IMG/VR virus record: IMGVR_UViG_3300045135_002615
Span: 186,001-250,000 of that record
Strand: one strand, 5' to 3'
Length of the DNA stretch: 64,000 bases
The position numbers and the translations under genes were made by a program. The notes under the pieces were generated by a model. That model saw only the letters and a program-made list of their open reading frames with translations. It made no database searches and was not told where the DNA came from. How positions within the stretch are numbered: the stretch's first letter is position 1; every line of letters starts with the position of its first letter. Shown piece by piece: positions 6,493 through 50,744 of the stretch.

Positions 6493-6507
6493 GTCGGTAA
6501 AACTAAC

Positions 6508-6534
6508 GGGTGGGGTTGATAGTCAACCCCACCC
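6508..6534 (+). terminator. GC-rich hairpin after the pentapeptide gene
   Basis: GGGTGGGGTTGA-TAG-TCAACCCCACCC. Confidence 0.5.
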
Positions 6535-6580
6535 TTCTCAACCTAAGATTGCTCGTAAGAGCATACATGTCGAGAGTAAG

Positions 6581-24775: not shown

Positions 24776-24868
24776 GTATTCACTCCTTGAGTGGGTTATA
24801 CAAGGCTTATGGTGTTAGTTTGTTTATGAGGGTCTTGCTCATAAAGGTTTGTTTTTTTGGAGATGACC

Positions 24869-27346
24869 ATGAGTATTAAGATAGCCCGTACTTTAAGGAT
24901 GGCTCTCAACAAGAGATTAGATGAGATAGATGAGATGATCCACATAGGTTCTCCTCAAGCCCGCCATCGTATCTTAGAGGCTAATCATATTCTCCACACT
25001 CTAGCGAACCAGCTCCATAGAGAAGCTACCAAGTCTAACGCAGAGAGAGAAGACGAAGGAGCAGAGAAGCTCATTCGTAAGGATCCCAAGAAGAGGGAGA
25101 GGAGAACAGACCTCCGCAAGAACAGGGTTGAGTTTGAAAAGGACCCTGACCTTCAAGGGTTAAACCGAGGAGATGGTGGCGACCCTGATCTTTCTAGGAG
25201 AGATCGTAAGATGGGGTCTGATTTAGATGTTGTTGAGAGACGGCTACTCTCTATTGCTAAGTCTGCTCTGAGCCATGAGTCTGTTTCACAACAAGCTCGT
25301 AAAAACCTAAGAAAAAATACTTATCAGGACAAGGACTCCAATAAGACAGTCTCTTTTGAGACTGCCTATACTAAGGGTAATCCCTCAGCGGTTGCTGACC
25401 TGAAGAAAGAAACCAGTAGGCTCAAGAAGGAACAAAAAGAGGAAGGTGGAGGGGGGCTCTTAAACCCCTTAGACTCACTGAAGCCCTCTCAAAAGCTATT
25501 ATTTTCTGAGATCGCTAAGGGTAAAGAGATATCGACATTGACTTTAGTTGAGGAACTCGTTCTTCAAGAGTCAATCTCTTCTCTAATTGAAGTTAAGGTT
25601 GAACTAGAGAAGAAGGGCGTTGTTGAACCTCCTCCTGAGAAGAAGAAAAGAAAGACACGGTCAGATAAGGGAGTACCTAGAGGACCATATACTAAGAGAG
25701 TTAAGGAAGAACTTGAGAAGATACTTCCTGATGAGATTGCTGGTGAAAATACTGCTGAATCGGTAGACTTAGATATACTCTCTTCCACTAGGTTGTTAGA
25801 TGCCAAGTCGTTAAACAACGCTCTATCGTCTATGGTTGAGACTTCCAAGAAAGAGGTTGCCAAGTCTGAAGCCCAATCCAAAAAGAAGCTCGTCGTAGAA
25901 AAAAAAGAGACAAAGAGAGATGTTGCCCAGCTCAAGTCCATCCTTGAATCTACGCCTGATAACACTAACGTAAAAAAACTTATGGAAGGCGTGTCAGAAC
26001 TTGATGAGAACCAACTTGAAGAGATGCAAGAGGCTAAGGAGAATAAAGAGGAAGATATCATAGCTGTTGTACTTGATGAGGGGGACTTAAATGAGTACAT
26101 CAAAGATGGGCAAGAGAAGGTGGACATCTCATCGCCCTCTGGGTTGGGCGAGGGTATTGCCTTAGAAAAGGCTAAAGAGGGATTGTTAAGAGATCCGATA
26201 TGGTCTTACCCATCCCCTCCTTCTGATCCAAAAGCATTAGAGGAGCATAACGACTACGTCTTATCAAGTGTCTTTGCAAGCTACTCCGGTATGGACCGTG
26301 AATTGCAGAGCGAGGTGTTGTCTTCATCACTTGAACGTAGAGAGAAGCTACTTGAAGAGATCAAGTCCAACACAGAGGGTAAGAAAGAAAAGGAAGATCA
26401 ACTCTCTAATCTTAATATGGCAATCTCTTCTATGAACATATTTTCAATACTTGAGGGTGATGAACCTTTAAAAGGCTTCAATGAAGTACCTAAAGACATT
26501 GTGTCACTTGCAGAGGTGAAACGCTCCGTCCCTATGCTTAAAATGATAGCACTCATGTCTGATCATGGTCAATCCAATATAGATATGAGAGAGGCGACAA
26601 AAACAGCTTTAGCTGAAGTGTCCGATGAAGACTTCATTGATTCTATGGGAGGGGATACGGGTCCTTACGGGGACTTACTAAAAATGTTAGACCCCTCTTT
26701 TTGCCCTCCTTCACTCAATAATAATGATGCCTCTGAGGGGGAGTGTCCGTCACCTATGACAGATGAAGATAGGAAAGTTATTCGTGACACGATAACCACT
26801 CTATTCCTGGACGGTCAGAGCTTAAAGAGGATTAATGAGGGGGCTTCAAAAAAGAAGTTTAAAACAAAGAAGAATGAAGACGAACAAAACTTTGATGCTC
26901 ACAGCGAGAGTGATGTCTCAGGTTTTGAAGAATATGAGAGCATCCTCTTTGAAGATGGTCCTCCTTCAAAAGAGAAGTTTGAAGAGTTTGGTGACATGGT
27001 TAGGGAGGAAAACTTGAGGAGGCTTGATCAAGAGCAAGGTCTGCCTAAAAATATACAAAATGCTGTTAGGGGACGAGGGAGACCCAAAAAGAAACCAGGT
27101 GACTCAAAGGGTAAATACACAAGACGTGAAAAGCCCGAAGGACCATTAGATGGGAGCTCCAAAGATGACACAGCACCCGCAAAGAATAAGGGCGGACGCC
27201 CAAGAAAGAAGCCTGGTGATCCAAAGGGTAAATATACAAGGCGGTTGGAGCCTCAAGAGGGTCAGGGCAGGGACAATGACCTGCTCGAAGAGATACGCAA
27301 GAGACATGAGGCTCTTTGGAATGAGCTAGAGAGAGACTTCGGTTAA
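24869..27346 (+). CDS. Large charged head-module protein with AT-hook-like repeats
   Basis: GRP[KR]KKPGD.KGKYTRR twice, RSDKG; lies upstream of the protease; motif variant at 24815. Confidence 0.75.
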   Translation: MSIKIARTLRMALNKRLDEIDEMIHIGSPQARHRILEANHILHTLANQLHREATKSNAEREDEGAEKLIRKDPKKRERRTDLRKNRVEFEKDPDLQGLNRGDGGDPDLSRRDRKMGSDLDVVERRLLSIAKSALSHESVSQQARKNLRKNTYQDKDSNKTVSFETAYTKGNPSAVADLKKETSRLKKEQKEEGGGGLLNPLDSLKPSQKLLFSEIAKGKEISTLTLVEELVLQESISSLIEVKVELEKKGVVEPPPEKKKRKTRSDKGVPRGPYTKRVKEELEKILPDEIAGENTAESVDLDILSSTRLLDAKSLNNALSSMVETSKKEVAKSEAQSKKKLVVEKKETKRDVAQLKSILESTPDNTNVKKLMEGVSELDENQLEEMQEAKENKEEDIIAVVLDEGDLNEYIKDGQEKVDISSPSGLGEGIALEKAKEGLLRDPIWSYPSPPSDPKALEEHNDYVLSSVFASYSGMDRELQSEVLSSSLERREKLLEEIKSNTEGKKEKEDQLSNLNMAISSMNIFSILEGDEPLKGFNEVPKDIVSLAEVKRSVPMLKMIALMSDHGQSNIDMREATKTALAEVSDEDFIDSMGGDTGPYGDLLKMLDPSFCPPSLNNNDASEGECPSPMTDEDRKVIRDTITTLFLDGQSLKRINEGASKKKFKTKKNEDEQNFDAHSESDVSGFEEYESILFEDGPPSKEKFEEFGDMVREENLRRLDQEQGLPKNIQNAVRGRGRPKKKPGDSKGKYTRREKPEGPLDGSSKDDTAPAKNKGGRPRKKPGDPKGKYTRRLEPQEGQGRDNDLLEEIRKRHEALWNELERDFG

Positions 27347-27397
27347 TTCCTTTTCAATAGTCCTTTTATGAGTGGGTGTAATAAAGTGGAGGTGTCT

Positions 27398-27910
27398 ATG
27401 CACAATAAGCGAGCCACGACTTATGTCGATTACCAAGAGAGAGCCAAAGGCTTCAATGTAGGGCAACGTGTGTTCCCTTACACTGAGGCTAAGCCTACTA
27501 AGGCGGGCGTTGTTCTTGCGGTATATCCTGCTATCGGGATGGTTGATGTGCAATTCCCACATGGCACTACACGCTTGCCCGTTGAGGACTTAGTGATCGA
27601 CACCTCTAACGATAGTGAGTCTTATCCCGTAGAAGAGAATAGCCTCCCTAGTGGAGATGCTGTTGTACCTGTGACAAGCAAGACAGCTAAGAGAGTTGCT
27701 TCACGTCACATGGAAGCTATGTATTGGGCTGCGGTAGATCGCAAGTATCGTCTCTGTAGGGGTGAAGACCCCACACGACCTTCTTGCCCCAAGTGTAAGG
27801 AGACTATGGGCACCTCCATCTACAAGAGAAGAGAAGGTGTCAGCGAGAAACTTCTTGTTTGTCCTTCTTGCCTCTTTGTCATTAAGAACACAGACTTGAT
27901 CGGAGGCTAA
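27398..27910 (+). CDS. Head-module protein with SH3-like and Zn-ribbon domains
   Basis: GGAGG RBS; CPKC...CPSC; KRVASRH; motif at 27357-27369. Confidence 0.75.
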   Translation: MHNKRATTYVDYQERAKGFNVGQRVFPYTEAKPTKAGVVLAVYPAIGMVDVQFPHGTTRLPVEDLVIDTSNDSESYPVEENSLPSGDAVVPVTSKTAKRVASRHMEAMYWAAVDRKYRLCRGEDPTRPSCPKCKETMGTSIYKRREGVSEKLLVCPSCLFVIKNTDLIGG

Positions 27911-27911
27911 A

Positions 27912-29354
27912 ATGGCATTCTTAAGATACGCTAAGGCTAATGTAGTGCGACCTGAACTACATGGTCTTGAATGGGATAAGGTCAGGGTCGCTTCGGGAGA
28001 CAAGAAGCTAAACAAGTCTCTCAAGAAGCAAGCTGAGGATATCCTTGGAGAGCCCTTCACACCCGAAAGATTCCTCCTTACTCACTCTACTATTGTTTGC
28101 TCCGTAGACGCAGTCTCTCCTCCCAATACCAAAACAGGTAATGTTGTTGAAGAAGGGGCTAAGGTAAATCGCAAGTATGCCGATTACAGAGTGTCCCCTG
28201 AGACGGATAAGTTTATCAACAACAACCTTGATTGTTGGTCACGGGGGGTCATCAAGAAGTCTTATCAGACTTTCATTGGGGCACATAACTTCGTGGAGCA
28301 CATCCAAGTTGAGGAACTCTCTAAAGGTCGCATTATTGATGCTGTTCTCCGAGATATTGGTGATAGCCTCTATGTGGATATACTTGTAGCCACAGACCGC
28401 AAGCACAAGGACCTCGTTGATCAAATCGTCTCAGGTAAGATGAACTCCATGAGTATGGGTTGTAGCGTCGAGTTTACGATTTGTACTAAATGCGGGCACG
28501 TTGCCGCTGATGAGACTGAGATGTGTCCCCATGTTAAGTATGAGAAGGGCAACACCTTCTTTGACGAACAGGGTAATAAGCATAGGGTTGCGGAGCTCTG
28601 TGGGCATGAAGATGTAGGAGGTACCGCAGGTGTGACCTTCATTGAAGCCTCATGGGTTGCCACGCCCGCATTCCCTGGTGCAGTAGCCCGCAACACCATT
28701 GAAATCCCATCAGATGAACCTGCTAAGGTTGCAAGCCTTAATGAAGTCCCTGAGAAGTGGATTGCCAAAGCCGCCTCTCTTGTTGACTCTCCTTGGTATG
28801 ACCCTAATGGAGTGCTTAGTAAGGTCGCAGGTCCCTTTGACGACATGGGTGGTGATGACGATAGTGACGGAGATAAAAAAGAAGAAAAGCCCGACCCCTC
28901 ACTACTCTCTCAACTTGAAGGTGTCTATGAAAAGGCGGTTATTGATCGTTTCCGTCAAAAGCTTGAGAATGAGATGAAGAAGGAGAAGGCTCAGGAAGCC
29001 ATGAACCCTCCTATCAGTAAGTCTACTGTCGAGCAAAATGACACCGTCATCAAAGAAGGTCATGTGAACGCAGCTCAGTATCTTAACGCTCTAGAGATCG
29101 CTGTTAAGACCGCCTCTTCAACTGAGGAAGCTGTGTTGAACCTTACTTTGGTCAACAATCACTATGGGGTTAATATCCCTCCTCATGTGTACAAGCTGGC
29201 TTCTAAGCTCGGCTCAACCTCAAACCATAAAGATGTAGATAGTTTCCTTAAGAAGGCTTCTACTCTACATGGTAAAATCTTGTCTAGTTCTGAAGCTCGC
29301 ATCCTAGTTAGGCTAGCTAAGATACTCTCAATCAACTCTTTCGGGCAGAGGTAA
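27912..29354 (+). CDS. Prohead (capsid maturation) protease
   Basis: FVEH, SMSMGC, Zn insert CTKC..C.H, FIEASWVATPA (HK97/assemblin-type pattern); position before scaffold and capsid. Confidence 0.8.
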   Translation: MAFLRYAKANVVRPELHGLEWDKVRVASGDKKLNKSLKKQAEDILGEPFTPERFLLTHSTIVCSVDAVSPPNTKTGNVVEEGAKVNRKYADYRVSPETDKFINNNLDCWSRGVIKKSYQTFIGAHNFVEHIQVEELSKGRIIDAVLRDIGDSLYVDILVATDRKHKDLVDQIVSGKMNSMSMGCSVEFTICTKCGHVAADETEMCPHVKYEKGNTFFDEQGNKHRVAELCGHEDVGGTAGVTFIEASWVATPAFPGAVARNTIEIPSDEPAKVASLNEVPEKWIAKAASLVDSPWYDPNGVLSKVAGPFDDMGGDDDSDGDKKEEKPDPSLLSQLEGVYEKAVIDRFRQKLENEMKKEKAQEAMNPPISKSTVEQNDTVIKEGHVNAAQYLNALEIAVKTASSTEEAVLNLTLVNNHYGVNIPPHVYKLASKLGSTSNHKDVDSFLKKASTLHGKILSSSEARILVRLAKILSINSFGQR

Positions 29355-29389
29355 AGTCCTGCCCCGTCATGTTAGAAAGGAATTGCCTT

Positions 29390-31036
29390 ATGTCTAGGTA
29401 TGACCGTTCAAATAAGTCTCGCAGGGCTATGGCTACACGTCGCCGTCGCTTTGCAAACTCTTCTATCCCTGGCTCAGACAACCTAGGTTGGGAGCACTTC
29501 GGACACCCCGCTGCTGGCGAGCAACCTGCTGTCGATGAGTATGGTTTTGATAGCGAGTTCGGTGAGGGCGTTCGCAAGGGTCCTTACAGCTCTGGTGCCG
29601 CTCCTGCCTCTTATGGTTGGTCTCCTGAGCACCCCGCTGCTTCAGACATGGTTCGTGAGGATTACGCCATGACTGAGACCCTCCGTAACGAGAACCTCAA
29701 GAAGGCTATGGAGCGTAAGGCAGCTAAGTGCATTGAGATTGCTGAGTCACGCCTCGGTAAATATGCGAGTGCCTCTGAGATTGAGGATCTTGCTCTTCGT
29801 TTCATGGATCTCCCCAACAGCGTTGTGAATGGTCGTGTCGCTTCTCTTCGTAATGCTGATAACGCTGTTCAGATGAACACAGGCTATGAGGGTCTTGACT
29901 TCACAGGTCCTGGTAACGCAGGTTCTGATCTTGAGGCAGACGAGTGGATGTCTGACGAGTTCGAGGCTGACATGGACATGATGGCTGATGAGCTTGAGGC
30001 AGACGAGTGGATGTCTGATGAGTTCGAGGCTGACATGGACATGATGGCTGATGAGTTCGAGGCTGATGAGCTTGAGGCTGACATGGACATGATGGCTGAG
30101 GACATTGAGGCACATGATCTCTTTGACGAGTATGACCTCGATGGTGATGACCTCATCTCCCGTGATGAGTGGGGCGGTAGCATGGGGGCGTTCGATGTAA
30201 TGGATCTTGATGAGGATGACTTCCTCTCTCGTGATGAGGTTGCTATGGGTCTAGGTGACTCTTTCGGCAACCCTTCACAGGCGGAGATGCTCGCTGAGGA
30301 GATTTCTAATCTTAAGCAAGCTAATGCCCGCCTCGCCCGTCAGGTTCGTAAGCTTGCCGATAACGCAGTTCAGCAAGCTACGGACTACACCGTAGAGGAC
30401 TTCAGCGATCCTATCGACACTACACCTGAGTCTGAGGAGGGTGAGGGCACTCCTACTCAGCGTCTTGCCCGTCTTGAGCGTCTCGCATCTGTACTCGCAG
30501 ATTACATGGGAGAGCTTGAGGCTGAGGAGGAGATGTCTGACATGAATGATCCTCACTACGGCTACTCAAAGGCAGCAGGTGATGAGCCCGAAGAGGAAGA
30601 GGGTGACGATGAGGATCTTGAGGAAGATGCCAAGAATGTTGCAGAGACCGCAGAAGATCCTAAGTCTGAGAAGAAGGCTTCTGAGGATCTTGAGGAAGAG
30701 GAGGCTGAGGAAGAGGAGACTGAGTCTGAGAAGAAGGCTTCTGACGACAACATGGGTCTCGATGTAGAGGACGGTGACATGGAGATTGATCCTCGTCTTG
30801 CTTCTATCTTCACCGCTTCTGACGAGGAAGAGGCTGAGGAAGAGGAGGCTGAGGAAGAGGAGACTGAGGGAGAGGAGCCTAAGTCTGAGAAGAAGGCTTC
30901 TTACAAGCCCGCTATCAATACTCGTCAGGCAAGTGTTAAGACCCTCGGTAACATCAGCCGTGAGGCTTCTGCTTCTTCTGATGAGCTCAGCAAGCTTTGG
31001 GCTTCAGCTCCTGACGTGAGCAAGTTCTTCGGTTAA
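29390..31036 (+). CDS. Capsid scaffolding protein with EF-hand pair
   Basis: Highly acidic, coiled coils, between protease and capsid genes; many [KR]xAS sites. Confidence 0.75.
   Translation: MSRYDRSNKSRRAMATRRRRFANSSIPGSDNLGWEHFGHPAAGEQPAVDEYGFDSEFGEGVRKGPYSSGAAPASYGWSPEHPAASDMVREDYAMTETLRNENLKKAMERKAAKCIEIAESRLGKYASASEIEDLALRFMDLPNSVVNGRVASLRNADNAVQMNTGYEGLDFTGPGNAGSDLEADEWMSDEFEADMDMMADELEADEWMSDEFEADMDMMADEFEADELEADMDMMAEDIEAHDLFDEYDLDGDDLISRDEWGGSMGAFDVMDLDEDDFLSRDEVAMGLGDSFGNPSQAEMLAEEISNLKQANARLARQVRKLADNAVQQATDYTVEDFSDPIDTTPESEEGEGTPTQRLARLERLASVLADYMGELEAEEEMSDMNDPHYGYSKAAGDEPEEEEGDDEDLEEDAKNVAETAEDPKSEKKASEDLEEEEAEEEETESEKKASDDNMGLDVEDGDMEIDPRLASIFTASDEEEAEEEEAEEEETEGEEPKSEKKASYKPAINTRQASVKTLGNISREASASSDELSKLWASAPDVSKFFG
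29933..30100 (+). repeat. 63-bp tandem repeats (EADEWMSDEFEADMDMMADEL)
   Basis: Units start at 29933 and 29996, plus a partial third. Confidence 0.9.
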
Positions 31037-31187: not shown

Positions 31188-31775
31188 ATGGCTCTACTTG
31201 GACAAGCTAGTGGTGGGTTCACTGAGAGCAGCTCTGCTCTGCGTATTCTGCACGTTGGTGTTCGTAACACCCTCGGTCAGCTCACCGCAGATAGCTTCAC
31301 TCAGTCTAACCCCAAGTTTACAACCGATGTTGACCGCATCTCAGCCGCACCTGGCCTTCTAACAGGCGTCTTCGGTGTCCTTAGCGGTTCTATCGCCTTC
31401 ACTCGCGGTGACGAGGGTGCGAGCTTCCACGGTGGTCCTACCGCCGCAGCAGGTCGTGCTCACACTGAGCGTGTTCTCGGCGTGTTCATCAACAACGCAA
31501 GCGGTAACGCTTTCGAGAACCAGCCTGGCGTTGCAAGCAACAAGGGTCCTTATGTCTCTGCACAGGGTAGCTACGCTAACCGCCTCTATGAGACATCTCA
31601 GACCGGTGCTGATGTTGCTCTTACCTATGCTTCAGGTGACAGCCTCTACGCTTCTATCAATGGTTTCCTTACCAATGACACCAACCAGCGTCACACGGAT
31701 ACCACTGAGATCGCCATCCTCAAGATTGCTCCCGACTCTACGTCTGACGAGCTAGTTTACGACCAGCGTATCTGA
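31188..31775 (+). CDS. Capsid decoration/cement protein
   Basis: Gly/Ala/Ser-rich, VLGVFIN...ASNK, immediately upstream of the capsid gene, biased codons. Confidence 0.7.
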   Translation: MALLGQASGGFTESSSALRILHVGVRNTLGQLTADSFTQSNPKFTTDVDRISAAPGLLTGVFGVLSGSIAFTRGDEGASFHGGPTAAAGRAHTERVLGVFINNASGNAFENQPGVASNKGPYVSAQGSYANRLYETSQTGADVALTYASGDSLYASINGFLTNDTNQRHTDTTEIAILKIAPDSTSDELVYDQRI

Positions 31776-31795: not shown

Positions 31796-32674
31796 ATGAG
31801 CAATACCGTAGATAACAGCGTTAAGAACAAGATCATCAGCGACTTCATCAAGACCCCTCAGGGTCGTGCTAAGCTCGCTGCTTCAATGACTCAGCCCCTC
31901 CGCCTCCGCCGTGACTATACATCAGTCGGCCGTAAGACCTTCCAGGTCGAGCAGCTTCCTGATGGAGCACTCCCCATCTACGACAAGGATCCCGATGTGA
32001 CCGCATTTGTCGTTGGTGAGGAAGGCGAGAACATCCTCGCTATCACCAAGCCACGCCGTGTGATCTTCCCTCTCTTCGAGATCGCATCTAACCCTGAGAT
32101 TCCCCTCACACAGATCAAGGAGCGTAGATTCGACCTCATCGAGCGTGCTCAGGATCTCGCTAGGGCTCAGATTCAGGCGGCTGAGGACGAGCGTGTGTTC
32201 GCTATACTCGATGCCGTTGCAGCTAACGGCTTCGACAGCGTTGCAGGTCAGACTAACGCTGACATCCCTGTCATCGCTCCTCTCAATGGTGCTGTCCTCG
32301 CTGACGCATTCGCACAGATCGAGCGTCACGACCTTCGCGTTGCCCGCGTATTCATGAACGCTCGTGACTACGCTGACATCCGTAAGTTCGGCCGTGATAT
32401 TCTCGACATCGAGAGCCAGGCTGCTCTCCTCAAGACTGGTCTTCAGGCTACTCTTTGGGGTGCTCAGATCATCACATCACGTCTCGTGCCTGTCGGTACG
32501 GTGTACGTCTGCTGTGAGCCTGAGATGTTCGGACGTATCCCCGTTCGTACTGAGCTCACCGTCCTCTCTGCTGACGATCCTAAGGCTCGTACAATTGGCT
32601 TCAGCGTCTTTGAGAATTTGGGCATTGGTGCCTACAACCCTCGCGGTCTAGTCCGCCTCACTGTTACTCGCTAA
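31796..32674 (+). CDS. Major capsid protein (HK97 fold)
   Basis: 292 aa; strongest codon bias; module position; GRAKLAASM..PLR...DY..VGRK, WGAQI, C-terminal NPRG; followed by a terminator. Confidence 0.88.
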   Translation: MSNTVDNSVKNKIISDFIKTPQGRAKLAASMTQPLRLRRDYTSVGRKTFQVEQLPDGALPIYDKDPDVTAFVVGEEGENILAITKPRRVIFPLFEIASNPEIPLTQIKERRFDLIERAQDLARAQIQAAEDERVFAILDAVAANGFDSVAGQTNADIPVIAPLNGAVLADAFAQIERHDLRVARVFMNARDYADIRKFGRDILDIESQAALLKTGLQATLWGAQIITSRLVPVGTVYVCCEPEMFGRIPVRTELTVLSADDPKARTIGFSVFENLGIGAYNPRGLVRLTVTR

Positions 32675-37146: not shown

Positions 37147-37696
37147 ATGATAGAGATTAAGATAGGTGATTGTGTAGATCGCCTCAAAGACCTAGATGAC
37201 AACTCAGTTGATGCAATCATCTCTGACCCCCCTTATGGGCTCAAGTTTATGTCTAAAGGTTGGGATGACATAGGTGAGGGTAGTCAACAAAGGGAGTGGC
37301 ATAGGAAATGGTTAACCGAAGCTCATAGGGTTCTTAAACCTAATGGGGTACTCAAAGCCTTCTCAGGGTCGAGGACATTCCATCACCTGATAGGGATGAT
37401 GGAAGAGATAGGCTTCTCAGATTTATCCGTAGAGGCTTGGACATATGGTTCTGGCTTCCCCCAAATCACATAACGTGGCTCTTGGCATCGACAAGAAACG
37501 TGGTCACGGGAACAGGGGTCGGGCGATACCCACAGCGTCAAGGTATCAAGCCTCAGATAAAGAGGAGGAGAACAAGCTCACCTCAAACCCTGTGGAGGAG
37601 TACAGGGCTAAGACGGAAGCCTCCGCACCTTTTGAGGGATGGGGGACAGCTCTAAAACCCGCATGGGAGCCCATTTGCATAGGAGTTAAAAAATGA
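37147..37696 (+). CDS. Split methyltransferase, catalytic subunit copy A2; frameshift at a C5 run (37458-37462)
   Basis: SDPPY; YGSGFP|KSHN motif broken by one extra C; ends WGTALKPAWEPI. Confidence 0.8.
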
Positions 37697-38301
37697 TTAT
37701 CACGTTACTGAGAAAGCCCTTAGAGGGGAGCGTAGCAGATAACGCCCTTAAACATGGTTGTGGGGCTATCAACATAGATGGCACTAGGGTGGGTACAGAA
37801 GCTCGCTCTTACAAAGGTGCAGGTAAAACCGATAAGGTTTACTCTGAGAGTGGGGCAGGTATGTTAGACGGCAGAGGGAAAGATATGGAGTTCTCTGTAG
37901 AGGGTAGGTGGCCTGCTAACTTCATTCTTACTCACCTTGATGGCTGTGAAATAAAAGGCACTAAGAAAGTTAAATCGGGTACTGCTTATCAGGACAAGAG
38001 GGCGGGGATCAATCATGTATACAGTGCCAATTTGGGTCCAAATGTAAAGGGAAAAGCAGGGTATGCAGATGAGGAGGGGAAAGAGGAAGTGGCGGATTGG
38101 GCTTGTGTAGAGGGTTGCCCTGTCATAGAGCTTGACCAACAAAGTGGACATCTTAAAAGTACGACAAGAAAACCCACAGGAAATCCGATATACCCTACCT
38201 CAAACACCTCAGTCACATGGAACCCAAACAATGTGATGGACACATCACAACGAGGGTTCAATGATGAGGGCGGGGCTTCTCGGTTCTTCAAGCAGTTCTA
38301 A
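37693..38301 (+). CDS. Split methyltransferase, middle (variable, putative target-recognition) subunit B
   Basis: RKPL, GAINID, GRWPAN, GGASRFF. Confidence 0.8.
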   Translation: MIITLLRKPLEGSVADNALKHGCGAINIDGTRVGTEARSYKGAGKTDKVYSESGAGMLDGRGKDMEFSVEGRWPANFILTHLDGCEIKGTKKVKSGTAYQDKRAGINHVYSANLGPNVKGKAGYADEEGKEEVADWACVEGCPVIELDQQSGHLKSTTRKPTGNPIYPTSNTSVTWNPNNVMDTSQRGFNDEGGASRFFKQF

Positions 38302-38335
38302 TATCGCGGTATGCGATTACACTAAGGAGAGATAA

Positions 38336-40252
38336 ATGAAAGACATGATTGATTACTTTAAAACGATGATTACCCCACCTGTAGAGGATGCTCTTGTGCT
38401 CGTAGCTAAGCCTTCTGAGATTGCTTATGATGAGTATATTCAGGAGGTCTTAGAGGAGGGTGAACTCGCACCTACTAGGGAGCCTATGGTTCACGGAGTC
38501 ATCCTCTTGGAAGAGCCTACAGATGAAGAATCTAAGCAGCTACTTTCCATCTTGAAGCCAGGTGGACATGTTGTACTGATCCCTGTAGACCCGATTGGAT
38601 ACAAGGGGGTGGTCGCCCTTGAGGACACAGGGTTTGAGGTACGAGATGCAATCTTTGTAGCAGATGATCCATATACCTTTTACTACACATCTAAGGCGAG
38701 TAGAACTGAGAGAGAAGCAGGGCTTAAGTCTAAAGATGGTAGTAGAGCCAACACCCACCCTTGCCTCCACCCCAGAGCAGATGTGCTCACAGATAGAGGG
38801 TATCGTCCTATCGAAGACATTAAGATTGGCGATAATGTCTATACTTCATCGGGGACGTTCCATAAGGTAGAGTATGTCTCCCGTCATCCTTACACTAGCC
38901 CATGCCTATATGAGATCTCAGTGCAAGGAACTAACTACACAACGCTCAGTTCTGATAATCATCCTTTCTTAATCTACCGCCCCGTTCGTAAGTCTAATGC
39001 TATTGTAGGAGGCTCTGTGGGATGGGTACAAGGCTGTGATATTCGTAAGGGGGACTATACGATGACCCCTGTCTTTAAAGAGCCTGTCGAAGACTCTCCT
39101 CTATCTCAAGATTCTTATGAGGGTTGGTTTGTGTTTGGGCTATGGGTTGCTGAGGGGGTTCTCCATACTTCGGGAGGGGGGTCCAACAGATACCCTTCTT
39201 TCACAATCAACTCAGAAAAGATCGAGCTTATTGAAACGATCAAACGTGTGTATTCTTCTGTGAATGTCTCAGTCTACGAAAAGCAAGGGAACGCAGTTCA
39301 AGTGGTGGCTTTTTGTCGAGACAAGGGGGAGGAGTACTTCCGTCTAGCAGGTAAAGGGGCGGGCACTAAGTCTCTCGACCCAAGCATATGGAAACTGAGC
39401 CTTTCAGAGAGACAAGCAATCTTAGATGGTTATATGGCAGGAGATGGGTGTGTAATTCGCTCATATACTCAAGCCAAAACGGTATCGCCTGATTTGGCTA
39501 GTCAGATGAGATTACTAGCCCACTCTGTAGGTCTTAAAGCAAACCTGTTTCGTTATGAGGGGAGTGTCGGAAGGGGTATTGGAGATCGTAAGTTTAAAAG
39601 CACCCTTCCTGAACACCATCTTAGATTTTACTCTAAGAACTTGAAACAAGCGAGAGGGGGCGGTTCAAGGAAGCCGAGCCGACCCACTATTATAAACCAT
39701 GAGGGAGTTGATTTTGTACTCTCCTATATTAAGTCTGTGGTGGAAGTTCCTTATGTAGGAGATGTCGTGAACCTCTCTGTTGAAGGCGACCCTACCTTTC
39801 AGACTGCTGTAGGTATGAGTCACAATACAGTGAAGCCCATAGGGATTATGGAGTGGTGTGCTAGGGACCTTGAGCCTAACTCTAAAGTCGCAGAGCCCTT
39901 CATGGGTTCAGGTACTACGGGTATCGCCATGAGCCGTCTTGGGCACGACTTCGTGGGTATAGAGCTGAACAAAGAATATGCGGAACTCAGTGAATCTTGT
40001 ATAAGGCATTGGATGCCCATTGGCACAGAGATCAAATCTGAGGCAGATGTGGGCAAAGCAGAATCTGCTCAAGGAGGGCAGGTATCTATTTTGACATCTT
40101 CGGATAGGAGACAACAATATGACACGTTATTGTGTTGCAACAGGAGAGAGTGCCAAGAGAGCCTTCTTGAAGGCAAAGGAGGAGAACCCTTTCCTAGACC
40201 CTTACAAGGCTTACTTCATCGAGAACTCGCATTGTGTATACAGCTTCGCTGA
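38336..40252 (+). CDS. Split methyltransferase, SAM-binding subunit C with intein; true stop probably 40107
   Basis: KAS..ER, HP|TVKP, PFMGSGTT; probable 1-nt slip at T4 (40089-40092). Confidence 0.85.
   Translation: MKDMIDYFKTMITPPVEDALVLVAKPSEIAYDEYIQEVLEEGELAPTREPMVHGVILLEEPTDEESKQLLSILKPGGHVVLIPVDPIGYKGVVALEDTGFEVRDAIFVADDPYTFYYTSKASRTEREAGLKSKDGSRANTHPCLHPRADVLTDRGYRPIEDIKIGDNVYTSSGTFHKVEYVSRHPYTSPCLYEISVQGTNYTTLSSDNHPFLIYRPVRKSNAIVGGSVGWVQGCDIRKGDYTMTPVFKEPVEDSPLSQDSYEGWFVFGLWVAEGVLHTSGGGSNRYPSFTINSEKIELIETIKRVYSSVNVSVYEKQGNAVQVVAFCRDKGEEYFRLAGKGAGTKSLDPSIWKLSLSERQAILDGYMAGDGCVIRSYTQAKTVSPDLASQMRLLAHSVGLKANLFRYEGSVGRGIGDRKFKSTLPEHHLRFYSKNLKQARGGGSRKPSRPTIINHEGVDFVLSYIKSVVEVPYVGDVVNLSVEGDPTFQTAVGMSHNTVKPIGIMEWCARDLEPNSKVAEPFMGSGTTGIAMSRLGHDFVGIELNKEYAELSESCIRHWMPIGTEIKSEADVGKAESAQGGQVSILTSSDRRQQYDTLLCCNRRECQESLLEGKGGEPFPRPLQGLLHRELALCIQLR
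38762..39826 (+). mobile_element. Intein with LAGLIDADG homing endonuclease (355 aa)
   Basis: HP|CLHP...SHN|TVKP; NHPF; FGLWVAEG and LDGYMAGDG. Confidence 0.93.
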
Positions 40253-48124: not shown

Positions 48125-48402
48125 AGAAGCTCCTCGCTGTACTCGCTCTCACCGCTCTTGCCACAGGTTGCACCGATGCCACAATCGGTGCTTATGGGTC
48201 TTACGGCTCACGGGGTCACGCCACTTGCTACTCAGGCGGCAAGGTCACTTTCAACGCGATCTCAACGGGTCGCGTGAAAGACCAAGAGAACTCAGACGGG
48301 TTCTCAGCCAAGTGGCAGGACGTGGGGTCTGATGGGAAACCTCAAGGACCTGTCTACTACGCCACGGTAAGTGGGCAGTGCATCATCAAGTACCTCGACT
48401 GA
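48121..48402 (+). CDS. Lipoprotein
   Basis: MKK, hydrophobic stretch, LATG|C lipobox. Confidence 0.75.
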   Translation: MKKLLAVLALTALATGCTDATIGAYGSYGSRGHATCYSGGKVTFNAISTGRVKDQENSDGFSAKWQDVGSDGKPQGPVYYATVSGQCIIKYLD

Positions 48403-49768
48403 TGATCACTTCAACACTAGCCAAGCTAGTGGCAACGCTGGTCGACTTGCGTAAAATACTCGCAAGACGACCCGCAGGGAAAGGCTGATAGAGTTCCTCT
48501 CTACTTAAGAGTTGGTCTTCAGTCAAATCCGCATTCCTAGCTACGGCTCTTAAGGGCTCTTTAAGAGCTTCATTAAGGGTTGGGGAGCTAGTCTCTATCT
48601 TGTATAGAGTTGGCAAAGCCCCCTCTACATATCCGTTCTTTAAAGCATCGGACATGGAGAGGAGGGCTTTTTCTGTTTGTACTCTCCTCACTCTACCCTC
48701 TGCTTCCGTATGACCACCTACTTTGAGCCTGATCAGTGAACCCGTTAGAGCATTAGCCCTCTGCCTCCACAAATCTTGTGTGTGGGTATGAGGGCTTTCT
48801 TGTGCTTCCTTTAAGAGCATCTCAGCTCTCTCTGCTGTCTTTTCAGCGTGTTCATCATAAGGGTATGTGATCATCTCATTGAAGTTAAGAACGCACTCAA
48901 AAGCGGATCCAAAGAACTCGGCTTTGAACTCACCATCAAGGTTAGGTTGGTGGACATGTCCTCCTGTAAATGCGGCGAAATCCTCCATCCACCCCATTCC
49001 CCATATGACTCTAGGGGCTTCTACGGCATGACAGTCGAGTACTCCCTTGTGCCTGTTTAGTTGGATTGTCTTGAGAGCCTGACCGCTAATGAAAGGGGCG
49101 ACGAGGACTAGTGGTCTGCCCTCAAATCCACCCATGAGCTCCATGATCGGCACGACCTGCTTCAAGTCTTTGAGGGGTTGGCTTGATAGGGCAAACATAG
49201 GTCCTTCTAGGTATGCCTCTTTATCTGTATGTATTCTTACTGATGAGTGTAGTGCCTCTGACTCAATGACCTCACACCCGACACCGATACCCTTCTCTAG
49301 CGTGATGTGTGTGGCTAGACCTCCACTCAGGTTGAGTGCCTCAGCGACCTTCTCAACACTTTCCCTATCTAAAGAACTCTCCATACCTATCTTGATAAGG
49401 GTATGTTCACTTGAGGGTAATGGTTTGATGTCTTTGATAGCCTCTAATACCGCATTATCGACTTGGTTAGTGTATGTCGGGTGTGGTGAGTCATACATGC
49501 GTGAGAAGCTCTTTAAAAGCCCCGTAGAGAGCAGGCAAGCAGTTTTAGCACCATCACCATTACCACATACCTCCAGGAGGTTGTATTGGACTATTTTTTG
49601 TATGATTGGGTTAGGGTAGTGCCATGCATTGAGTATGGACTTAGCGGAGGGGTTGTTCCATATTGAACCCCCTCTTTGCATCAATACGGTAGTCCCCTTT
49701 GCTTTGTGGGCGGCGAGCAAGATTTGTTCTACCTGTTTGATCGCGGGTATAAGATTATGGAACGACAT
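48386..49768 (-). CDS. Divergent GroEL-like chaperonin
   Basis: KGTTV, GDGAKT, RPLVLVA, AVEAP, D.A..TGG, LKVGG.TE.E, G.V.G, EPLR. Confidence 0.8.
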   Translation of the reverse strand: MSFHNLIPAIKQVEQILLAAHKAKGTTVLMQRGGSIWNNPSAKSILNAWHYPNPIIQKIVQYNLLEVCGNGDGAKTACLLSTGLLKSFSRMYDSPHPTYTNQVDNAVLEAIKDIKPLPSSEHTLIKIGMESSLDRESVEKVAEALNLSGGLATHITLEKGIGVGCEVIESEALHSSVRIHTDKEAYLEGPMFALSSQPLKDLKQVVPIMELMGGFEGRPLVLVAPFISGQALKTIQLNRHKGVLDCHAVEAPRVIWGMGWMEDFAAFTGGHVHQPNLDGEFKAEFFGSAFECVLNFNEMITYPYDEHAEKTAERAEMLLKEAQESPHTHTQDLWRQRANALTGSLIRLKVGGHTEAEGRVRRVQTEKALLSMSDALKNGYVEGALPTLYKIETSSPTLNEALKEPLRAVARNADLTEDQLLSREELYQPFPAGRLASILRKSTSVATSLASVEVIISRGT

Positions 49769-49799
49769 CGAGGATCTCCATGTGAAAGGACTATGAAAC

Positions 49800-50744
49800 A
49801 TGTCTTCATCCGTTATACAGACTAGATCATCAGCGATCAGCTATAATACACGAGCCGCTAATTCAGTAGGTTGGGGTGGGTCTATCCCCCCCGCAGCAAT
49901 AGAGGCTTTCCCAGGTCTTGCTAAAGACCCTTCAACCAATGACTTTGCATTAGCTGTGGAGGCCTTCCAAGAGAAGACTTTTGGTGCGGGTGCTTCAGTA
50001 GATGGGAAGATGGGGCGTGGTACATGGTCCGCTCTCCTGAAGCAGTATGATCGAGTAGATGATACACAGCCCTTTTGGACTATTAACGACAGGCGTGTCA
50101 ACGTGGAGATTGACCCCTCTGTGGAGGTTGTAAACTTTGATCAGCCAGGTGGTCTTGATCTACACCGATTTGGTCACTTCTCATCTCGTAAGCGACCCCC
50201 ACGCTTTATTGTGGTACATTGGGGCGGTCTTGACCCTCATCATTGTTACAGGGTATTCTCAAGCCCTGATCGTCAAGTGAGCTCTCATGCGGGTATTGGG
50301 GTCTCACCTGAAGGCACCGCTACGATCTATCAGTACCTCGACCTCAACCATAAGTCATGGCACGCAGGTTGGGCAAACTCATATTCTGTAGGTATTGATA
50401 TTTGTCAGCAACCTTCTCTTAGGTGGAAGGATCATTACATCAAGAATGGTTACAACGTCCAAGAGATGAAGAACATGACGGGCAGGGGCGATGCTAATGT
50501 TTTGACCCTTGATCCTAGAGTAGCAATCGCTACTCGTGAAGCCGTTAAGAGCCTCTGTAAGGTTCTTAACATCCCTTATCAGTTCCCATGTGGTTCAGAT
50601 GGTCAGAGCTATGAGGGTGGTTTTTATCATGGGGTAGTGGATAAGGATTATCTCACTAACTCCTTCACAGGTGTGATTGGGCATCATCATATCACACAGA
50701 AGAAGTGGGATTGTGCCTGTTGGTGGGACACTCTCTTTGGTTGA
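49800..50744 (+). CDS. N-acetylmuramoyl-L-alanine amidase with peptidoglycan-binding domain (endolysin-like)
   Basis: AFQ...VDGKMG..TW; IVVH, SSH, WHAG..N..SVGI, GHH...K.DC. Confidence 0.85.
   Translation: MSSSVIQTRSSAISYNTRAANSVGWGGSIPPAAIEAFPGLAKDPSTNDFALAVEAFQEKTFGAGASVDGKMGRGTWSALLKQYDRVDDTQPFWTINDRRVNVEIDPSVEVVNFDQPGGLDLHRFGHFSSRKRPPRFIVVHWGGLDPHHCYRVFSSPDRQVSSHAGIGVSPEGTATIYQYLDLNHKSWHAGWANSYSVGIDICQQPSLRWKDHYIKNGYNVQEMKNMTGRGDANVLTLDPRVAIATREAVKSLCKVLNIPYQFPCGSDGQSYEGGFYHGVVDKDYLTNSFTGVIGHHHITQKKWDCACWWDTLFG

What the first reader, a model, noticed from the sequence alone, without database searches (positions are those of the whole stretch)
30119..30245. Canonical EF-hand pair within the capsid scaffold
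LFDEYDLDGDDLISRDEW and AFDVMDLDEDDFLSRDEV both fit the DxDxDxx[IL]SxxE 12-residue loop. Calcium could gate core assembly, or the released fragment could carry Ca2+ in the head. I do not know of this in phage scaffolds.
Basis: partly seen in the sequence, partly recalled or inferred. Interest (0 to 1): 0.6.

Follow-up and report, generated by a model that had tools for sequence, protein, structure and literature searches.

The report
EF-hand pair in jumbo-phage scaffold protein
A marine jumbo phage carries a conserved, unusually compact pair of calcium-type EF-hand sites in the acidic protein encoded between its head protease and capsid genes; I found no earlier report of this, but many close relatives lack it, so it is an optional add-on and not a requirement for building the head.

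Summary
ORF 29369-31036 (+), which more likely starts at 29390, has two 12-residue EF-hand loops at aa 256-267 and 279-290.

**The EF-hand pair is real.**
- The excised segment passes Pfam's EF-hand_6 cut-off.
- A profile of 41 homologous segments hits solved EF-hand proteins, best lanmodulin and RasGRP2.
- AlphaFold2 models the segment at pLDDT >90. The model superposes on Ca2+-bound EF lobes at 1.5-2.0 Å.
- The metal-ligand positions are nearly invariant in 47 distinct relatives, and dN/dS is about 0.19.
- The pair is compact. Only 11 residues separate the loops, against about 25 in typical pairs, and position 6 is Asp here where most relatives have Gly.

**The host protein looks like the head scaffold or core protein.** The evidence is position (protease, this gene, a 195-aa ORF, then a major capsid protein without a delta domain), acidic helical and disordered build, and a near-invariant C-terminal motif. 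No homology or experiment shows it.

**The module is optional.** The capsid protein is 88-97% identical in the relatives compared, yet about half of the syntenic genes lack the EF pair. A tree needs at least 5-7 gains or losses.

The best reading is a metal-stabilised folding node in the hypervariable middle of the scaffold. An obligatory calcium gate is unlikely, and Ca2+ carriage into the head would be negligible. It is a new variant of a known kind and moderately interesting.

The parts
29369..31036 (+). Scaffold/core-like gene (555 aa from 29369). The likely true start is ATG 29390, giving 548 aa.
   Evidence: ORF. 103 homologues. The family consensus begins at M8, and AAAGGA lies 10 nt upstream of 29390. 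The public gene call P0003 starts too late, at M94.
29441..29644 (+). Conserved Pro/Gly/aromatic-rich N-terminal region (aa 25-92), predicted disordered
   Evidence: Near-invariant columns in the family alignment A2. pLDDT 44-61. Also conserved in the LR745208.1 orthologue.
29645..29878 (+). Conserved helical domain (aa 93-170)
   Evidence: Thirteen invariant columns lie between aa 72 and 146 of A2. Three helices, with pLDDT 91-96 over aa ~110-160. Structural matches are unspecific helix-loop-helix arrangements.
29926..30070 (+). 63-bp tandem repeat (2.3 copies, 92% matches) encoding an Asp/Glu/Met-rich segment just upstream of the EF domain
   Evidence: The composition of aa 181-300 is 24% D, 16% E and 12% M.
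30113..30265 (+). Compact EF-hand pair domain (aa 249-299)
   Evidence: Pfam EF-hand_6 scores 28.9 bits against a cut-off of 25 on the excised segment. Profile hits to PDB EF-hand proteins. pLDDT 88-93. rmsd 1.5-2.0 Å to Ca2+-bound EF lobes, Z up to 7.1. H249, D253, Y255, G269, G270, F275, G294 and G296 are invariant; W268 is W or F.
30134..30169 (+). EF loop 1 (aa 256-267)
   Evidence: PS00018 match. Among 47 distinct relatives: position 1 is D in 47, position 3 is D in 45, position 5 is D in 43 and N in 4, position 8 is I in 43 and V in 4, position 12 is E in 47.
30203..30238 (+). EF loop 2 (aa 279-290)
   Evidence: PS00018 match. Position 1 is D in 47 of 47, position 3 is D or N in 45, position 5 is D in 42, position 6 is G in 45 (this phage has D), position 8 is L in 45, position 12 is E in 44 and D in 3.
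30272..30382 (+). Long conserved helix (aa 302-338), a probable coiled-coil segment
   Evidence: Family consensus. Helix 302-338, with 10-residue block pLDDT 55-81 and highest values (78-81) over aa 311-330.
30923..31036 (+). Near-invariant C-terminal block (aa 519-555) ending in the L-W-x3-A-P-D-V motif; the candidate shell-binding or targeting element
   Evidence: Present in nearly all 103 homologues. A533, L540, W544, A547, P548, D549 and F554 are invariant in 80 sequences. Binding to the capsid protein could not be assessed.
27912..29354 (+). Head maturation protease homologue (480 aa), immediately upstream
   Evidence: phrog_18299 at 5.8e-15. 31% identity, E=3e-20, to phage G gp19, which is called the head maturation protease in PMC12484599.
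31188..31775 (+). 195-aa ORF between the scaffold-like gene and the capsid gene. It sits where phage G and Tunturi_5 have their decoration-type gene; function not shown.
   Evidence: Synteny. No sequence similarity to phage G gp26.
31796..32674 (+). Major capsid protein (292 aa, HK97 type, no delta domain)
   Evidence: phrog_2522 at 1.1e-51, covering aa 9-288. 38% identity to phage G gp27, 47% to Tunturi_5 gp334, 88% to LR745208.1.

Best explanation
The window is part of a ~297-kb marine jumbo phage of the phage G / Tunturi_5 capsid lineage. The gene at 29390-31036 encodes the head scaffold or core protein. It is long, acidic, and mostly helical or disordered. Its N-terminal domains and its extreme C-terminal motif are conserved and probably anchor it in the prohead. 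Its middle is hypervariable.

In this phage and many relatives, that middle carries a ~50-residue compact EF-hand pair. Two D-x-D-x-D...E loops are joined by only 11 residues, and the model pairs them through a short beta-bridge. By ligand chemistry (Asp at positions 1, 3 and 5, bidentate Glu at 12), each loop should bind one Ca2+, or Mg2+ at cytoplasmic concentrations.

The domain has a very small hydrophobic core. By analogy with the similarly spaced lanmodulin, it probably folds only when metal is bound. That would turn a floppy acidic linker into a rigid node between the preceding acidic helix and the following long helix. I propose that this node tunes the compaction, solubility or self-association of the scaffold core.

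Shown here: the EF-hand identity, its conservation under purifying selection, its position in the head gene module, and its dispensability across the lineage. Inferred: the scaffold role, metal binding itself, the disorder-to-order behaviour, and the effect on the core.
For: EF-hand identity:
- Two PS00018 matches.
- Excised segment passes Pfam EF-hand_6 (28.9 bits against 25), and all 41 homologous segments match EF-hand families, best E 6e-13.
- The profile hits solved EF-hand proteins: lanmodulin E=3e-8, RasGRP2 E=5e-7.
- AF2 gives pLDDT >90 with a helix-loop-helix-loop-helix pattern and paired beta residues.
- Nearly all top structural matches are Ca2+-bound EF lobes: Z 3.8-5.5 for the domain model and up to 7.1, rmsd 1.5-2.0 Å over 48-51 residues, in the full-length model. 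Lanmodulin 8fns gives Z 5.4, rmsd 1.7 Å.

Selection:
- Ligand positions are nearly invariant while positions 2, 4 and 10 vary freely in 47 distinct sequences.
- dN/dS is ~0.19, similar to the conserved N-terminal (0.12) and C-terminal (0.11-0.22) blocks.
- The module and its synteny persist in relatives only 26-34% identical overall.

Scaffold role:
- Gene order is protease, this gene, a 195-aa ORF, then the capsid gene. Tunturi_5 has the same order with an unrelated acidic 528-aa protein in this slot.
- The capsid protein has no delta domain.
- The protein is 28% D+E. It has long helices, and 223 of 555 residues have pLDDT below 50.
- The C-terminal motif is near-invariant, as is the capsid protein.

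Short linker and metal-dependent folding: lanmodulin's 12-13-residue spacing, against ~25 in typical Ca2+-responsive EF-hand proteins, is stated in PMC11845868.
Against: - No experiment or homology to a characterised scaffold supports the scaffold assignment. Pfam and PHROGs give nothing outside the EF domain.
- The complex prediction of the C-terminal block with the capsid protein gave no verdict.
- In this particular phage both loops have Asp where most relatives have Gly at position 6, which may lower affinity.
- Free Ca2+ in bacterial cytoplasm is sub-micromolar (general knowledge), so occupancy during assembly is uncertain.
- The module is absent from about half of the close relatives, so any effect on the core is dispensable and could be small.
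- AF2 confidence does not show metal binding or apo-state disorder.
Confidence: 0.55

Rival explanations
1. Cargo or internal-protein reading. The conserved N- and C-terminal parts only target the protein into the prohead. The variable middle cassettes, the EF pair among them, are payload that stays in the mature head as processed fragments or is ejected with the DNA. The EF pair would be Ca2+-loaded in seawater (about 10 mM) and would lose metal in the host cytoplasm, so it could act as a release or unfolding switch, or it could act on the host.
For: The middle region is a mosaic of swappable modules among phages whose capsid proteins are 88-97% identical. The EF state changes at least 5-7 times on the tree. 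A repeated SEKKAS motif and a conserved KKAS-x-RP sit at segment borders, which would suit protease processing. The phage comes from seawater. Fast-changing internal head proteins with targeting sequences are known in T4 (my knowledge, not tested here).
Against: No cleavage sites are known and there are no virion proteomics. The other cassettes have no recognisable function. Purifying selection on the EF module fits this reading and the best explanation equally well.
Confidence: 0.2
2. One reading: Ca2+ binding gates scaffold-core assembly or disassembly, so that assembly proceeds only at a given Ca2+ level.
For: A real EF pair sits in the protein at the scaffold position. The EF domain lies between two long helices, where a conformational switch could change the geometry.
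Against: Sister phages with capsid proteins 92-97% identical to this one, and the same protease, lack the module. One (L012) retains only a short remnant of the entering segment. An essential gate would not be lost repeatedly. No Ca2+ signal during infection of marine bacteria is known to me.
Confidence: 0.15
3. One reading: a released EF fragment carries Ca2+ into the head as a counter-ion store.
For: T4 retains acidic internal peptides from its core proteins (my knowledge). The EF region lies in an acidic segment.
Against: Two ions per copy and at most roughly a thousand to a few thousand copies would offset about 1% of the ~593,000 phosphate charges of a 297-kb genome (my estimate). Capsids are permeable to ions, and seawater supplies 10 mM Ca2+ and ~50 mM Mg2+ anyway.
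Confidence: 0.03
4. Compositional artefact: an Asp/Glu-rich repeat region matches the EF pattern by chance, with no fold and no metal site.
For: The protein is 28% D+E and a 63-bp tandem repeat lies next to the site. The full-length Pfam score is below the cut-off, 21.9 against 25. One pattern match arises in 1-2% of shuffles.
Against: Ligand positions and the hydrophobic framework are conserved position by position in 47 distinct sequences. dN/dS is ~0.19. The two loops differ by synonymous changes at 5 of 11 conserved codons, read directly, and TRF does not call them a repeat. The excised domain passes Pfam. The AF2 and structural matches are confident.
Confidence: 0.03
5. A lanmodulin-like lanthanide binder.
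For: The best PDB sequence hit is lanmodulin and the loop spacing is similarly short.
Against: Pro at loop position 2, the feature that review names as distinctive of lanmodulin, never occurs in 47 sequences. There are two EF hands, not four. Lanthanides are present only at trace levels in seawater (my knowledge).
Confidence: 0.02

Closest known systems
Canonical EF-hand pair lobes (calmodulin/troponin C lobes, polcalcin, parvalbumin, the SCaMC regulatory domain)
   Same: 12-residue loops with D1, D/N3, D5, a hydrophobic residue at 8, S/D at 9 and E12. Entering and exiting helices. The model pairs the loops through a short beta-bridge. rmsd is 1.5-2.0 Å over ~50 residues.
   Different: The linker between the loops is 11 residues, not ~25, so the exiting helix of hand 1 and the entering helix of hand 2 are reduced to about one turn around an invariant W-G-G-S. 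The domain is embedded in a disordered viral structural protein. This phage has Asp at position 6 of both loops.
Lanmodulin (Methylorubrum extorquens; PDB 6mi5, 8fns)
   Same: Best sequence-profile hit (E=3e-8). Adjacent EF loops are 12-13 residues apart. The carboxylate-rich loops lie on a minimal helical core. The metal-dependent folding of lanmodulin (my knowledge; its spacing is in PMC11845868) serves as the working analogy.
   Different: No Pro at loop position 2. Two hands, not four. A cytoplasmic phage head protein, not a periplasmic lanthanide shuttle.
Phage scaffolding and prohead-core proteins (P22 gp8, T4 gp22, phi29 gp7; recalled from knowledge, not tested by homology)
   Same: The gene lies between the protease and the capsid gene. 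The protein is acidic, elongated and helical or disordered, with a short conserved C-terminal element. Its sequence evolves fast beside a slowly evolving capsid protein.
   Different: No sequence or fold similarity could be shown. I know of no characterised scaffold that contains a metal-binding EF-hand domain, and none turned up in the literature searches.
Positional counterparts in cultured relatives: Tunturi_5 gp332 (528 aa) and phage G gp21 (486 aa)
   Same: Same slot downstream of the head maturation protease, similar length, acidic low-complexity composition.
   Different: No detectable homology (hhalign probability below 1%) and no EF-hand loops (for gp332; by eye for gp21).

Membership tests
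EF-hand (Pfam clan EF_hand; PROSITE PS00018) | 12-residue loop matching PS00018, with ligands at positions 1, 3, 5, 9 and 12 | tested here: met
   Two matches, at aa 256-268 and 279-291.
EF-hand (Pfam clan EF_hand; PROSITE PS00018) | Bidentate Glu at loop position 12 | tested here: met
   E267 and E290. Position 12 is E in 47 of 47 sequences for loop 1 and 44 of 47 (3 Asp) for loop 2.
EF-hand (Pfam clan EF_hand; PROSITE PS00018) | Gly at loop position 6 (typical, not obligatory; PROSITE allows D, N, Q, G, H, R, K) | tested here: not met
   This phage has D261 and D284. Relatives have Gly in 27 of 47 (loop 1) and 45 of 47 (loop 2).
EF-hand (Pfam clan EF_hand; PROSITE PS00018) | Profile HMM score above the curated cut-off | tested here: met
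   The full-length protein scores 21.9 bits, below the cut-off of 25. The excised segment scores 28.9 bits on EF-hand_6. All 41 homologous segments match EF-hand families.
EF-hand (Pfam clan EF_hand; PROSITE PS00018) | Helix-loop-helix fold, with the two hands paired by a beta-bridge | tested here: met
   Prediction only. pLDDT is above 90, and DSSP gives H-loop(E)-H-loop(E)-H. Structural matches to Ca2+-bound lobes reach Z 7.1 at rmsd 1.5 Å.
EF-hand (Pfam clan EF_hand; PROSITE PS00018) | About 25 residues between the two loops of a pair | tested here: not met
   The linker is 11 residues in all 47 sequences. The typical value is taken from PMC11845868.
EF-hand (Pfam clan EF_hand; PROSITE PS00018) | Measured Ca2+ binding | not testable with these tools
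   Needs ITC, NMR or Tb3+ luminescence.
Lanmodulin | Short (12-13 residue) spacing between adjacent EF loops | tested here: met
   11 residues, against 12-13 in lanmodulin.
Lanmodulin | Pro at position 2 of the EF loops | tested here: not met
   0 of 47 sequences in either loop.
Lanmodulin | Four EF hands forming a three-helix bundle | tested here: not met
   Only two loops in the protein, and only this one protein with paired loops in the whole genome.
Phage scaffolding / prohead-core protein (a functional class) | Gene in the head module next to the protease and capsid genes, with a capsid protein that lacks its own delta domain | tested here: met
   The synteny is kept in distant relatives.
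Phage scaffolding / prohead-core protein (a functional class) | Elongated helical or disordered acidic protein with a conserved C-terminal shell-binding element | tested here: inconclusive
   The architecture and the invariant C-terminal motif are present. Binding to the capsid protein could not be assessed (no verdict).
Phage scaffolding / prohead-core protein (a functional class) | Homology to a characterised scaffold family | tested here: not met
   No Pfam or PHROG hit outside the EF domain. No fold match.
Phage scaffolding / prohead-core protein (a functional class) | Present in proheads and removed or cleaved on maturation | not testable with these tools
   No cultured member. Needs proteomics.
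Dockerin (type I) | Two ~22-residue Ca2+-binding repeats matching the Dockerin_1 profile, with Asp/Asn at position 12 | tested here: not met
   The 23-residue period is similar, but no Dockerin family appears among the Pfam hits, position 12 is Glu, and the model has an entering helix.

The most novel reading that the evidence does not exclude
The scaffold of this abundant marine jumbo-phage lineage is a modular delivery vehicle. Its conserved ends load it into the prohead, and its swappable middle cassettes are payload. Under this reading the compact EF pair would be a Ca2+ switch carried in the virion. It would be metal-loaded and folded in seawater, and it would lose metal and unfold at the 10^4-10^5-fold lower Ca2+ of the host cytoplasm, timing the release or action of an internal head protein at infection. 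That would be a calcium-sensing step in tailed-phage infection, comparable in logic to Ca2+-dependent uncoating of some eukaryotic viruses.
Probability: 0.1. Interest if true: 0.8.

Novelty: new variant of a known kind. Interest (0 to 1): 0.55.

Why it matters
Scaffolding proteins are usually described as simple helical, largely disordered assembly chaperones. A conserved metal-binding domain inside one suggests that divalent cations can be built into head-core architecture.

The case is also a natural experiment. Hundreds of marine phages share a nearly identical capsid protein but differ in whether the scaffold carries the module.

The 50-residue, 11-residue-linker EF pair is a second natural example of the minimal lanmodulin-type spacing, this time without the lanthanide-specific proline. 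That may interest people who design metal-switchable peptides.

The lineage is widespread: 573 IMG/VR loci and more than 2,000 capsid protein clusters. Any function would therefore be ecologically common.

Tried and rejected
- **Complex prediction.** It then ran and gave no verdict, score 0.00. This is no evidence either way.
- **Full-length model against BFVD.** Only meaningless low-TM matches.
- **EF model against BFVD.** A few weak EF-like proteins, mostly from giant viruses, and no scaffold.
- **Full-length model against PDB representatives.** Outside the EF domain, only unspecific helix-loop-helix matches for aa 83-178.
- **hhalign comparisons.** The family against Tunturi_5 gp332, and the C-terminal block against the phage G gp21 C-terminus, showed no relation.
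- **The 195-aa ORF against phage G decoration protein gp26.** No similarity. 'Decoration' is therefore positional only.
- **ESM Atlas look-alikes of the whole protein.** No usable hit.
- **PHROGs on five excised segments.** Nothing below E=0.02.
- **Literature.** Four searches on EF-hand or calcium with phage scaffold, virion or jumbo phage found nothing relevant. The phage G and Tunturi papers say nothing about the positional counterparts.
- **KKAS as a protease site.** The motif occurs 11 times in all ORFs of the genome, 3 of them in this protein and 1 near the protease C-terminus. The enrichment is suggestive but not decisive, and no cleavage data exist.
- **Scaffold length as a capsid-size ruler.** Scaffold lengths (413-765 aa) show no obvious relation to the lengths of the longest contigs. 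This was informal, because the contigs may be incomplete.
- **Habitat correlation of EF-positive and EF-negative forms.** No sample metadata were available. I can only say that the EF-positive window is from seawater and that one EF-negative relative (P0061) is also held by Tara, an ocean survey.
- **The big representative search and the third word search were not used.** The family was already well populated.
Full report
**1. The observation**

The + strand ORF 29369-31036 encodes 555 aa (P0001). Both loops match the complete PROSITE EF-hand pattern PS00018, at aa 256-268 and 279-291, 23 residues start to start.

In 20,000 composition-preserving shuffles, a single match appears in 1.3% (whole protein) to 1.9% (acidic middle). 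Two matches appear in 2-4 cases. The two hands look like old copies of each other, so the single-match rate is the fair null. That null fails on conservation (section 2).

At the DNA level the two hands differ by synonymous changes at 5 of the 11 codons whose amino acid is shared (read directly). Tandem Repeats Finder does not call them a repeat, although it calls a young 63-bp repeat just upstream at 29926-30070.

The real start is probably ATG 29390. The family consensus begins there, and AAAGGA lies 10 nt upstream. The public gene call (P0003) starts too late, at M94. I keep the numbering from 29369.

**2. Is it an EF-hand?**

- **Pfam.** On the whole protein, EF-hand_6 reaches only 21.9 bits against a cut-off of 25. 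Cut out of its biased context (aa 234-312), the segment scores 28.9 bits. All 41 homologous segments match EF-hand_6, EF-hand_1 and EF-hand_7, with a best E-value of 6e-13.
- **Solved structures by sequence.** A profile of the 41 segments hits 419 solved chains at E up to 1, and all of the best 60 listed are EF-hand proteins. The best are lanmodulin (6mi5 and 8fns, E=3e-8) and the RasGRP2 EF domain (E=5e-7).
- **Structure prediction.** AlphaFold2 with that alignment gives pLDDT above 90 over aa ~251-295. The pattern is short helix, loop, short helix, loop, helix, with one beta-bridge between the loops. The same domain appears in the full-length model.
- **Fold comparison.** The Foldseek top hits in the PDB are all EF-hand proteins, with probability up to 0.99 and weak E-values as expected for 50 residues. 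VIA-align against 48,161 representative chains returns almost only Ca2+-bound EF lobes.
  - For the domain model, Z is 3.8-5.5.
  - In the full-length model, Z reaches 7.1 at rmsd 1.5-2.0 Å over 48-51 residues. Lanmodulin 8fns gives Z 5.4 at rmsd 1.7 Å.
- **Conservation in 47 distinct domain sequences.**
  - Loop 1: D at position 1 in 47, D at 3 in 45, D or N at 5 in 47, I or V at 8 in 47, E at 12 in 47.
  - Loop 2: D at 1 in 47, D or N at 3 in 45, D at 5 in 42, G at 6 in 45, L or I at 8 in 47, E at 12 in 44.
  - Non-ligand positions 2, 4 and 10 vary freely.
  - The framework residues H249, D253, Y255, the G-G of the linker, F275 and G294/G296 are invariant. W268 is W or F.
- **Selection.** Pairwise dN/dS on 16 distinct DNA versions is about 0.19. 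The conserved N-terminal helix gives 0.12 and the C-terminal block 0.11-0.22. dS is about 1.4, so it is near saturation and the ratios are approximate.

I conclude that this is a real EF-hand pair under purifying selection.

**3. How it departs from the canonical pair**

- Only 11 residues separate the loops. A review states that lanmodulin has 12-13 residues and typical Ca2+-responsive EF-hand proteins about 25 (PMC11845868).
- The exiting helix of hand 1 and the entering helix of hand 2 are therefore reduced to about one turn around an invariant W-G-G-S.
- Lanmodulin's distinctive Pro at loop position 2 never occurs here, so this is not a lanmodulin.
- In this phage both loops have Asp at position 6. 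Relatives have Gly in 27 of 47 (loop 1) and 45 of 47 (loop 2). PROSITE allows Asp at this position.

**4. What protein is this?**

*Genome.* The window is bases 186001-250000 of a 296,642-bp virus record estimated 95% complete. A seawater metagenome run holds 97% of the gene's sampled words. The surrounding genes are phage-like: ribonucleotide reductase, DNA methyltransferases, a GroEL-like chaperonin and an endolysin.

*Head module.* The gene order is as follows.

| Position in window | Product | Evidence |
|---|---|---|
| 24857-27346 | 829-aa low-complexity protein | |
| 27368-27910 | 180-aa protein with weak zinc-ribbon-like Pfam matches (E 0.13-0.31) | |
| 27912-29354 | 480-aa head maturation protease homologue | phrog_18299 at 6e-15; 31% identity, E=3e-20, to phage G gp19 |
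| 29369-31036 | the EF-hand protein | |
| 31188-31775 | 195-aa ORF | |
| 31796-32674 | 292-aa HK97-type major capsid protein | phrog_2522 at 1e-51, covering aa 9-288, so no delta domain; 38% to phage G gp27, 47% to Tunturi_5 gp334 |

*Relatives.* Tunturi_5 has the same order, with an unrelated acidic 528-aa protein in the same slot. Phage G has gp19 (protease), gp20, then the 486-aa gp21.

*Build of the protein.* It is 28% Asp+Glu. The full-length model gives the following.

| Residues | Feature |
|---|---|
| 1-92 | Disordered but conserved Pro/Gly/aromatic-rich N-terminus |
| 93-170 | Confident helical domain |
| ~181-248 | Acidic, Met-rich, low-confidence helix |
| 249-299 | EF domain |
| 302-338 | Long helix |
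| 339-518 | Mostly disorder |
| 539-545 | Short C-terminal helix |

*C-terminal motif.* The last ~37 residues, ending in an L-W-x3-A-P-D-V motif, are nearly invariant in about 100 homologues whose overall identity falls to 26%.

*Assessment.* A capsid protein without a delta domain needs a separate scaffold (general knowledge of HK97-type assembly). This is the only candidate in the module. Its most conserved element is the extreme C-terminus, next to an extraordinarily conserved capsid protein. Together these make the scaffold or core assignment likely, about 0.7 in my estimate.

It remains inferred. There is no homology to any characterised scaffold. The attempt to predict binding of the C-terminal block to the capsid protein gave no verdict.

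**5. Distribution**

The capsid protein has 573 relatives in IMG/VR, and the best 80 are 90-97% identical. The protein database holds 2,094 clusters at E up to 1e-10, and the top 120 are at least 87% identical.

The scaffold-like protein is only 26-69% identical by best local alignment among its 103 homologues, and about 43-52% in the near-full-length alignments.

I examined the syntenic gene in the 80 loci. Of the 58 in which the gene is complete, 28 have the EF pair and 30 do not. The EF-negative group includes loci whose capsid protein is 96-97% identical to this one.

A maximum-likelihood tree was built on the conserved N- and C-terminal blocks, with the EF columns excluded (111 rows, quick method). 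It needs 7 changes of EF state. At least 5 are forced by well-supported branches, against about 37 for shuffled labels. The window's own clade contains both states. The EF-negative L012 keeps only a short remnant of the entering segment, which suggests loss by deletion.

Very distant members (P0085, P0086, P0087; 26-44% identity by local alignment) still have the pair. For P0085 and P0086 the same gene order was confirmed on their contigs, and the capsid protein next to P0086 is 88% identical to this one.

The module is therefore old, maintained where present, and repeatedly lost or exchanged. Other lineages carry different unannotated cassettes in the same region: His/Met/Asp repeats, a basic aromatic repeat, and tandem coiled-coil units. 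None has a Pfam match above its curated cut-off; the nearest is a sub-threshold bZIP-type hit on a coiled-coil repeat.

**6. Mechanism**

*Shown:* a conserved EF-hand pair in the variable middle of the head-module protein.

*Inferred from EF-hand chemistry (established knowledge):*
- Each loop binds one Ca2+ through Asp 1, 3 and 5, a backbone carbonyl at 7, Ser at 9 (via water) and bidentate Glu at 12.
- Loops with Asp at positions 1, 3 and 5 also accept Mg2+ at millimolar levels.

*Inferred by analogy with lanmodulin:* a pair with so short a linker and so small a core is probably unfolded without metal and folds on binding.

*My best explanation (confidence 0.55):* the module is a metal-stabilised node that rigidifies the junction between the acidic helix and the long helix. 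It thereby tunes compaction, solubility or self-association of the scaffold core. It is useful but dispensable.

- Repeated loss among phages with near-identical capsid and protease genes argues against an obligatory Ca2+ gate (confidence 0.15).
- A Ca2+ store is quantitatively negligible. It would offset about 1% of the DNA charge even with a few thousand copies (my estimate) (confidence 0.03).

*A serious rival (0.2) is the cargo reading.* The conserved ends target the protein into the prohead, and the variable cassettes are payload that stays in the head or is ejected. An EF pair loaded in seawater would then lose Ca2+ in the cytoplasm. The mosaic middle and the repeated SEKKAS / KKAS-x-RP motifs at segment borders fit processing. 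No cleavage or virion data exist.

**7. Novelty**

EF-hands and scaffolds are both well known, but I could not find the combination described.
- Four full-text searches found nothing relevant.
- No PHROG family matches the module, not even its canonical Gly-6 form.
- BFVD holds only a few weak EF-like viral proteins, mostly from giant viruses.

I rate it a new variant of a known kind, with interest about 0.55. It is a clean and widespread finding, but optional and of unknown effect.

**8. Limits**

All structural statements are predictions. Metal binding, presence in the prohead and proteolytic processing are untested. The tree used the quick method. The dN/dS values rest on saturated dS.

Noticed in passing
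window 31796-32674 against 29369-31036: The major capsid protein is 87-97% identical across more than 120 protein clusters and 573 IMG/VR loci. The adjacent scaffold-like protein falls to 26-50% identity. Even where the scaffold is 34% identical, the capsid protein is 88%. This is an unusually strong contrast in evolutionary rate between neighbouring head genes.
   Followed up: partly
window 29926-30070: A 63-bp tandem repeat (2.3 copies, 92% matches) encodes an Asp/Glu/Met-rich unit. Residues 181-300 are 12% Met. Relatives carry His/Met/Asp-rich repeats at this place, which look like soft-metal binding sequences.
   Followed up: no
window 30671-30682, 30731-30742, 30890-30901; also 29250-29261: The KKAS motif (within SEKKAS) occurs three times in the scaffold-like protein, and KKAS-x-RP is conserved in the family just before the C-terminal block. 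KKAS also lies 33 residues from the C-terminus of the protease ORF. These are possible maturation cleavage sites.
   Followed up: partly
window 29369-29650: The public gene call for this protein (462 aa, starting at M94) misses about 86 conserved N-terminal residues. The family consensus and a Shine-Dalgarno-like AAAGGA point to ATG 29390.
   Followed up: yes
window 37693-40252: Two adjacent ORFs carry the N-terminal and C-terminal parts of one DNA methyltransferase family (phrog_3008). The second ORF also has a ~250-aa segment resembling inserts found in ribonucleotide reductases. The gene may be split or invaded by an intein or homing element.
   Followed up: no
window 6434-9031: The ribonucleotide reductase large subunit matches its families in two stretches, with a ~300-aa gap between roughly aa 256 and 556. 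The gap may be an intein.
   Followed up: no
window 48386-49801 (-): A GroEL-like chaperonin gene (phrog_5725, 4e-24). The weak EF-hand_7 hit inside it (E=0.08) looks spurious.
   Followed up: no
L022, L028, L040, L085 (syntenic scaffold genes of relatives): EF-negative scaffolds, and one EF-positive one, carry one to three copies (usually two) of a ~50-aa basic, aromatic module (G-F-G-Y-Q-D-P-D ... N-K-N-Y-Y) with no Pfam match. It is another cassette of unknown function in the same variable region.
   Followed up: partly
L001 2920-3780 and L088 3793-6726: Relatives have extra genes inserted in or next to the head module. LR745208.1 has an ORF with a GIY-YIG-like N-terminal motif (my reading of the sequence) between the gene matching the window's 180-aa ORF and the protease. 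L088 has a 977-aa LAGLIDADG_2 protein downstream of the capsid gene.
   Followed up: no
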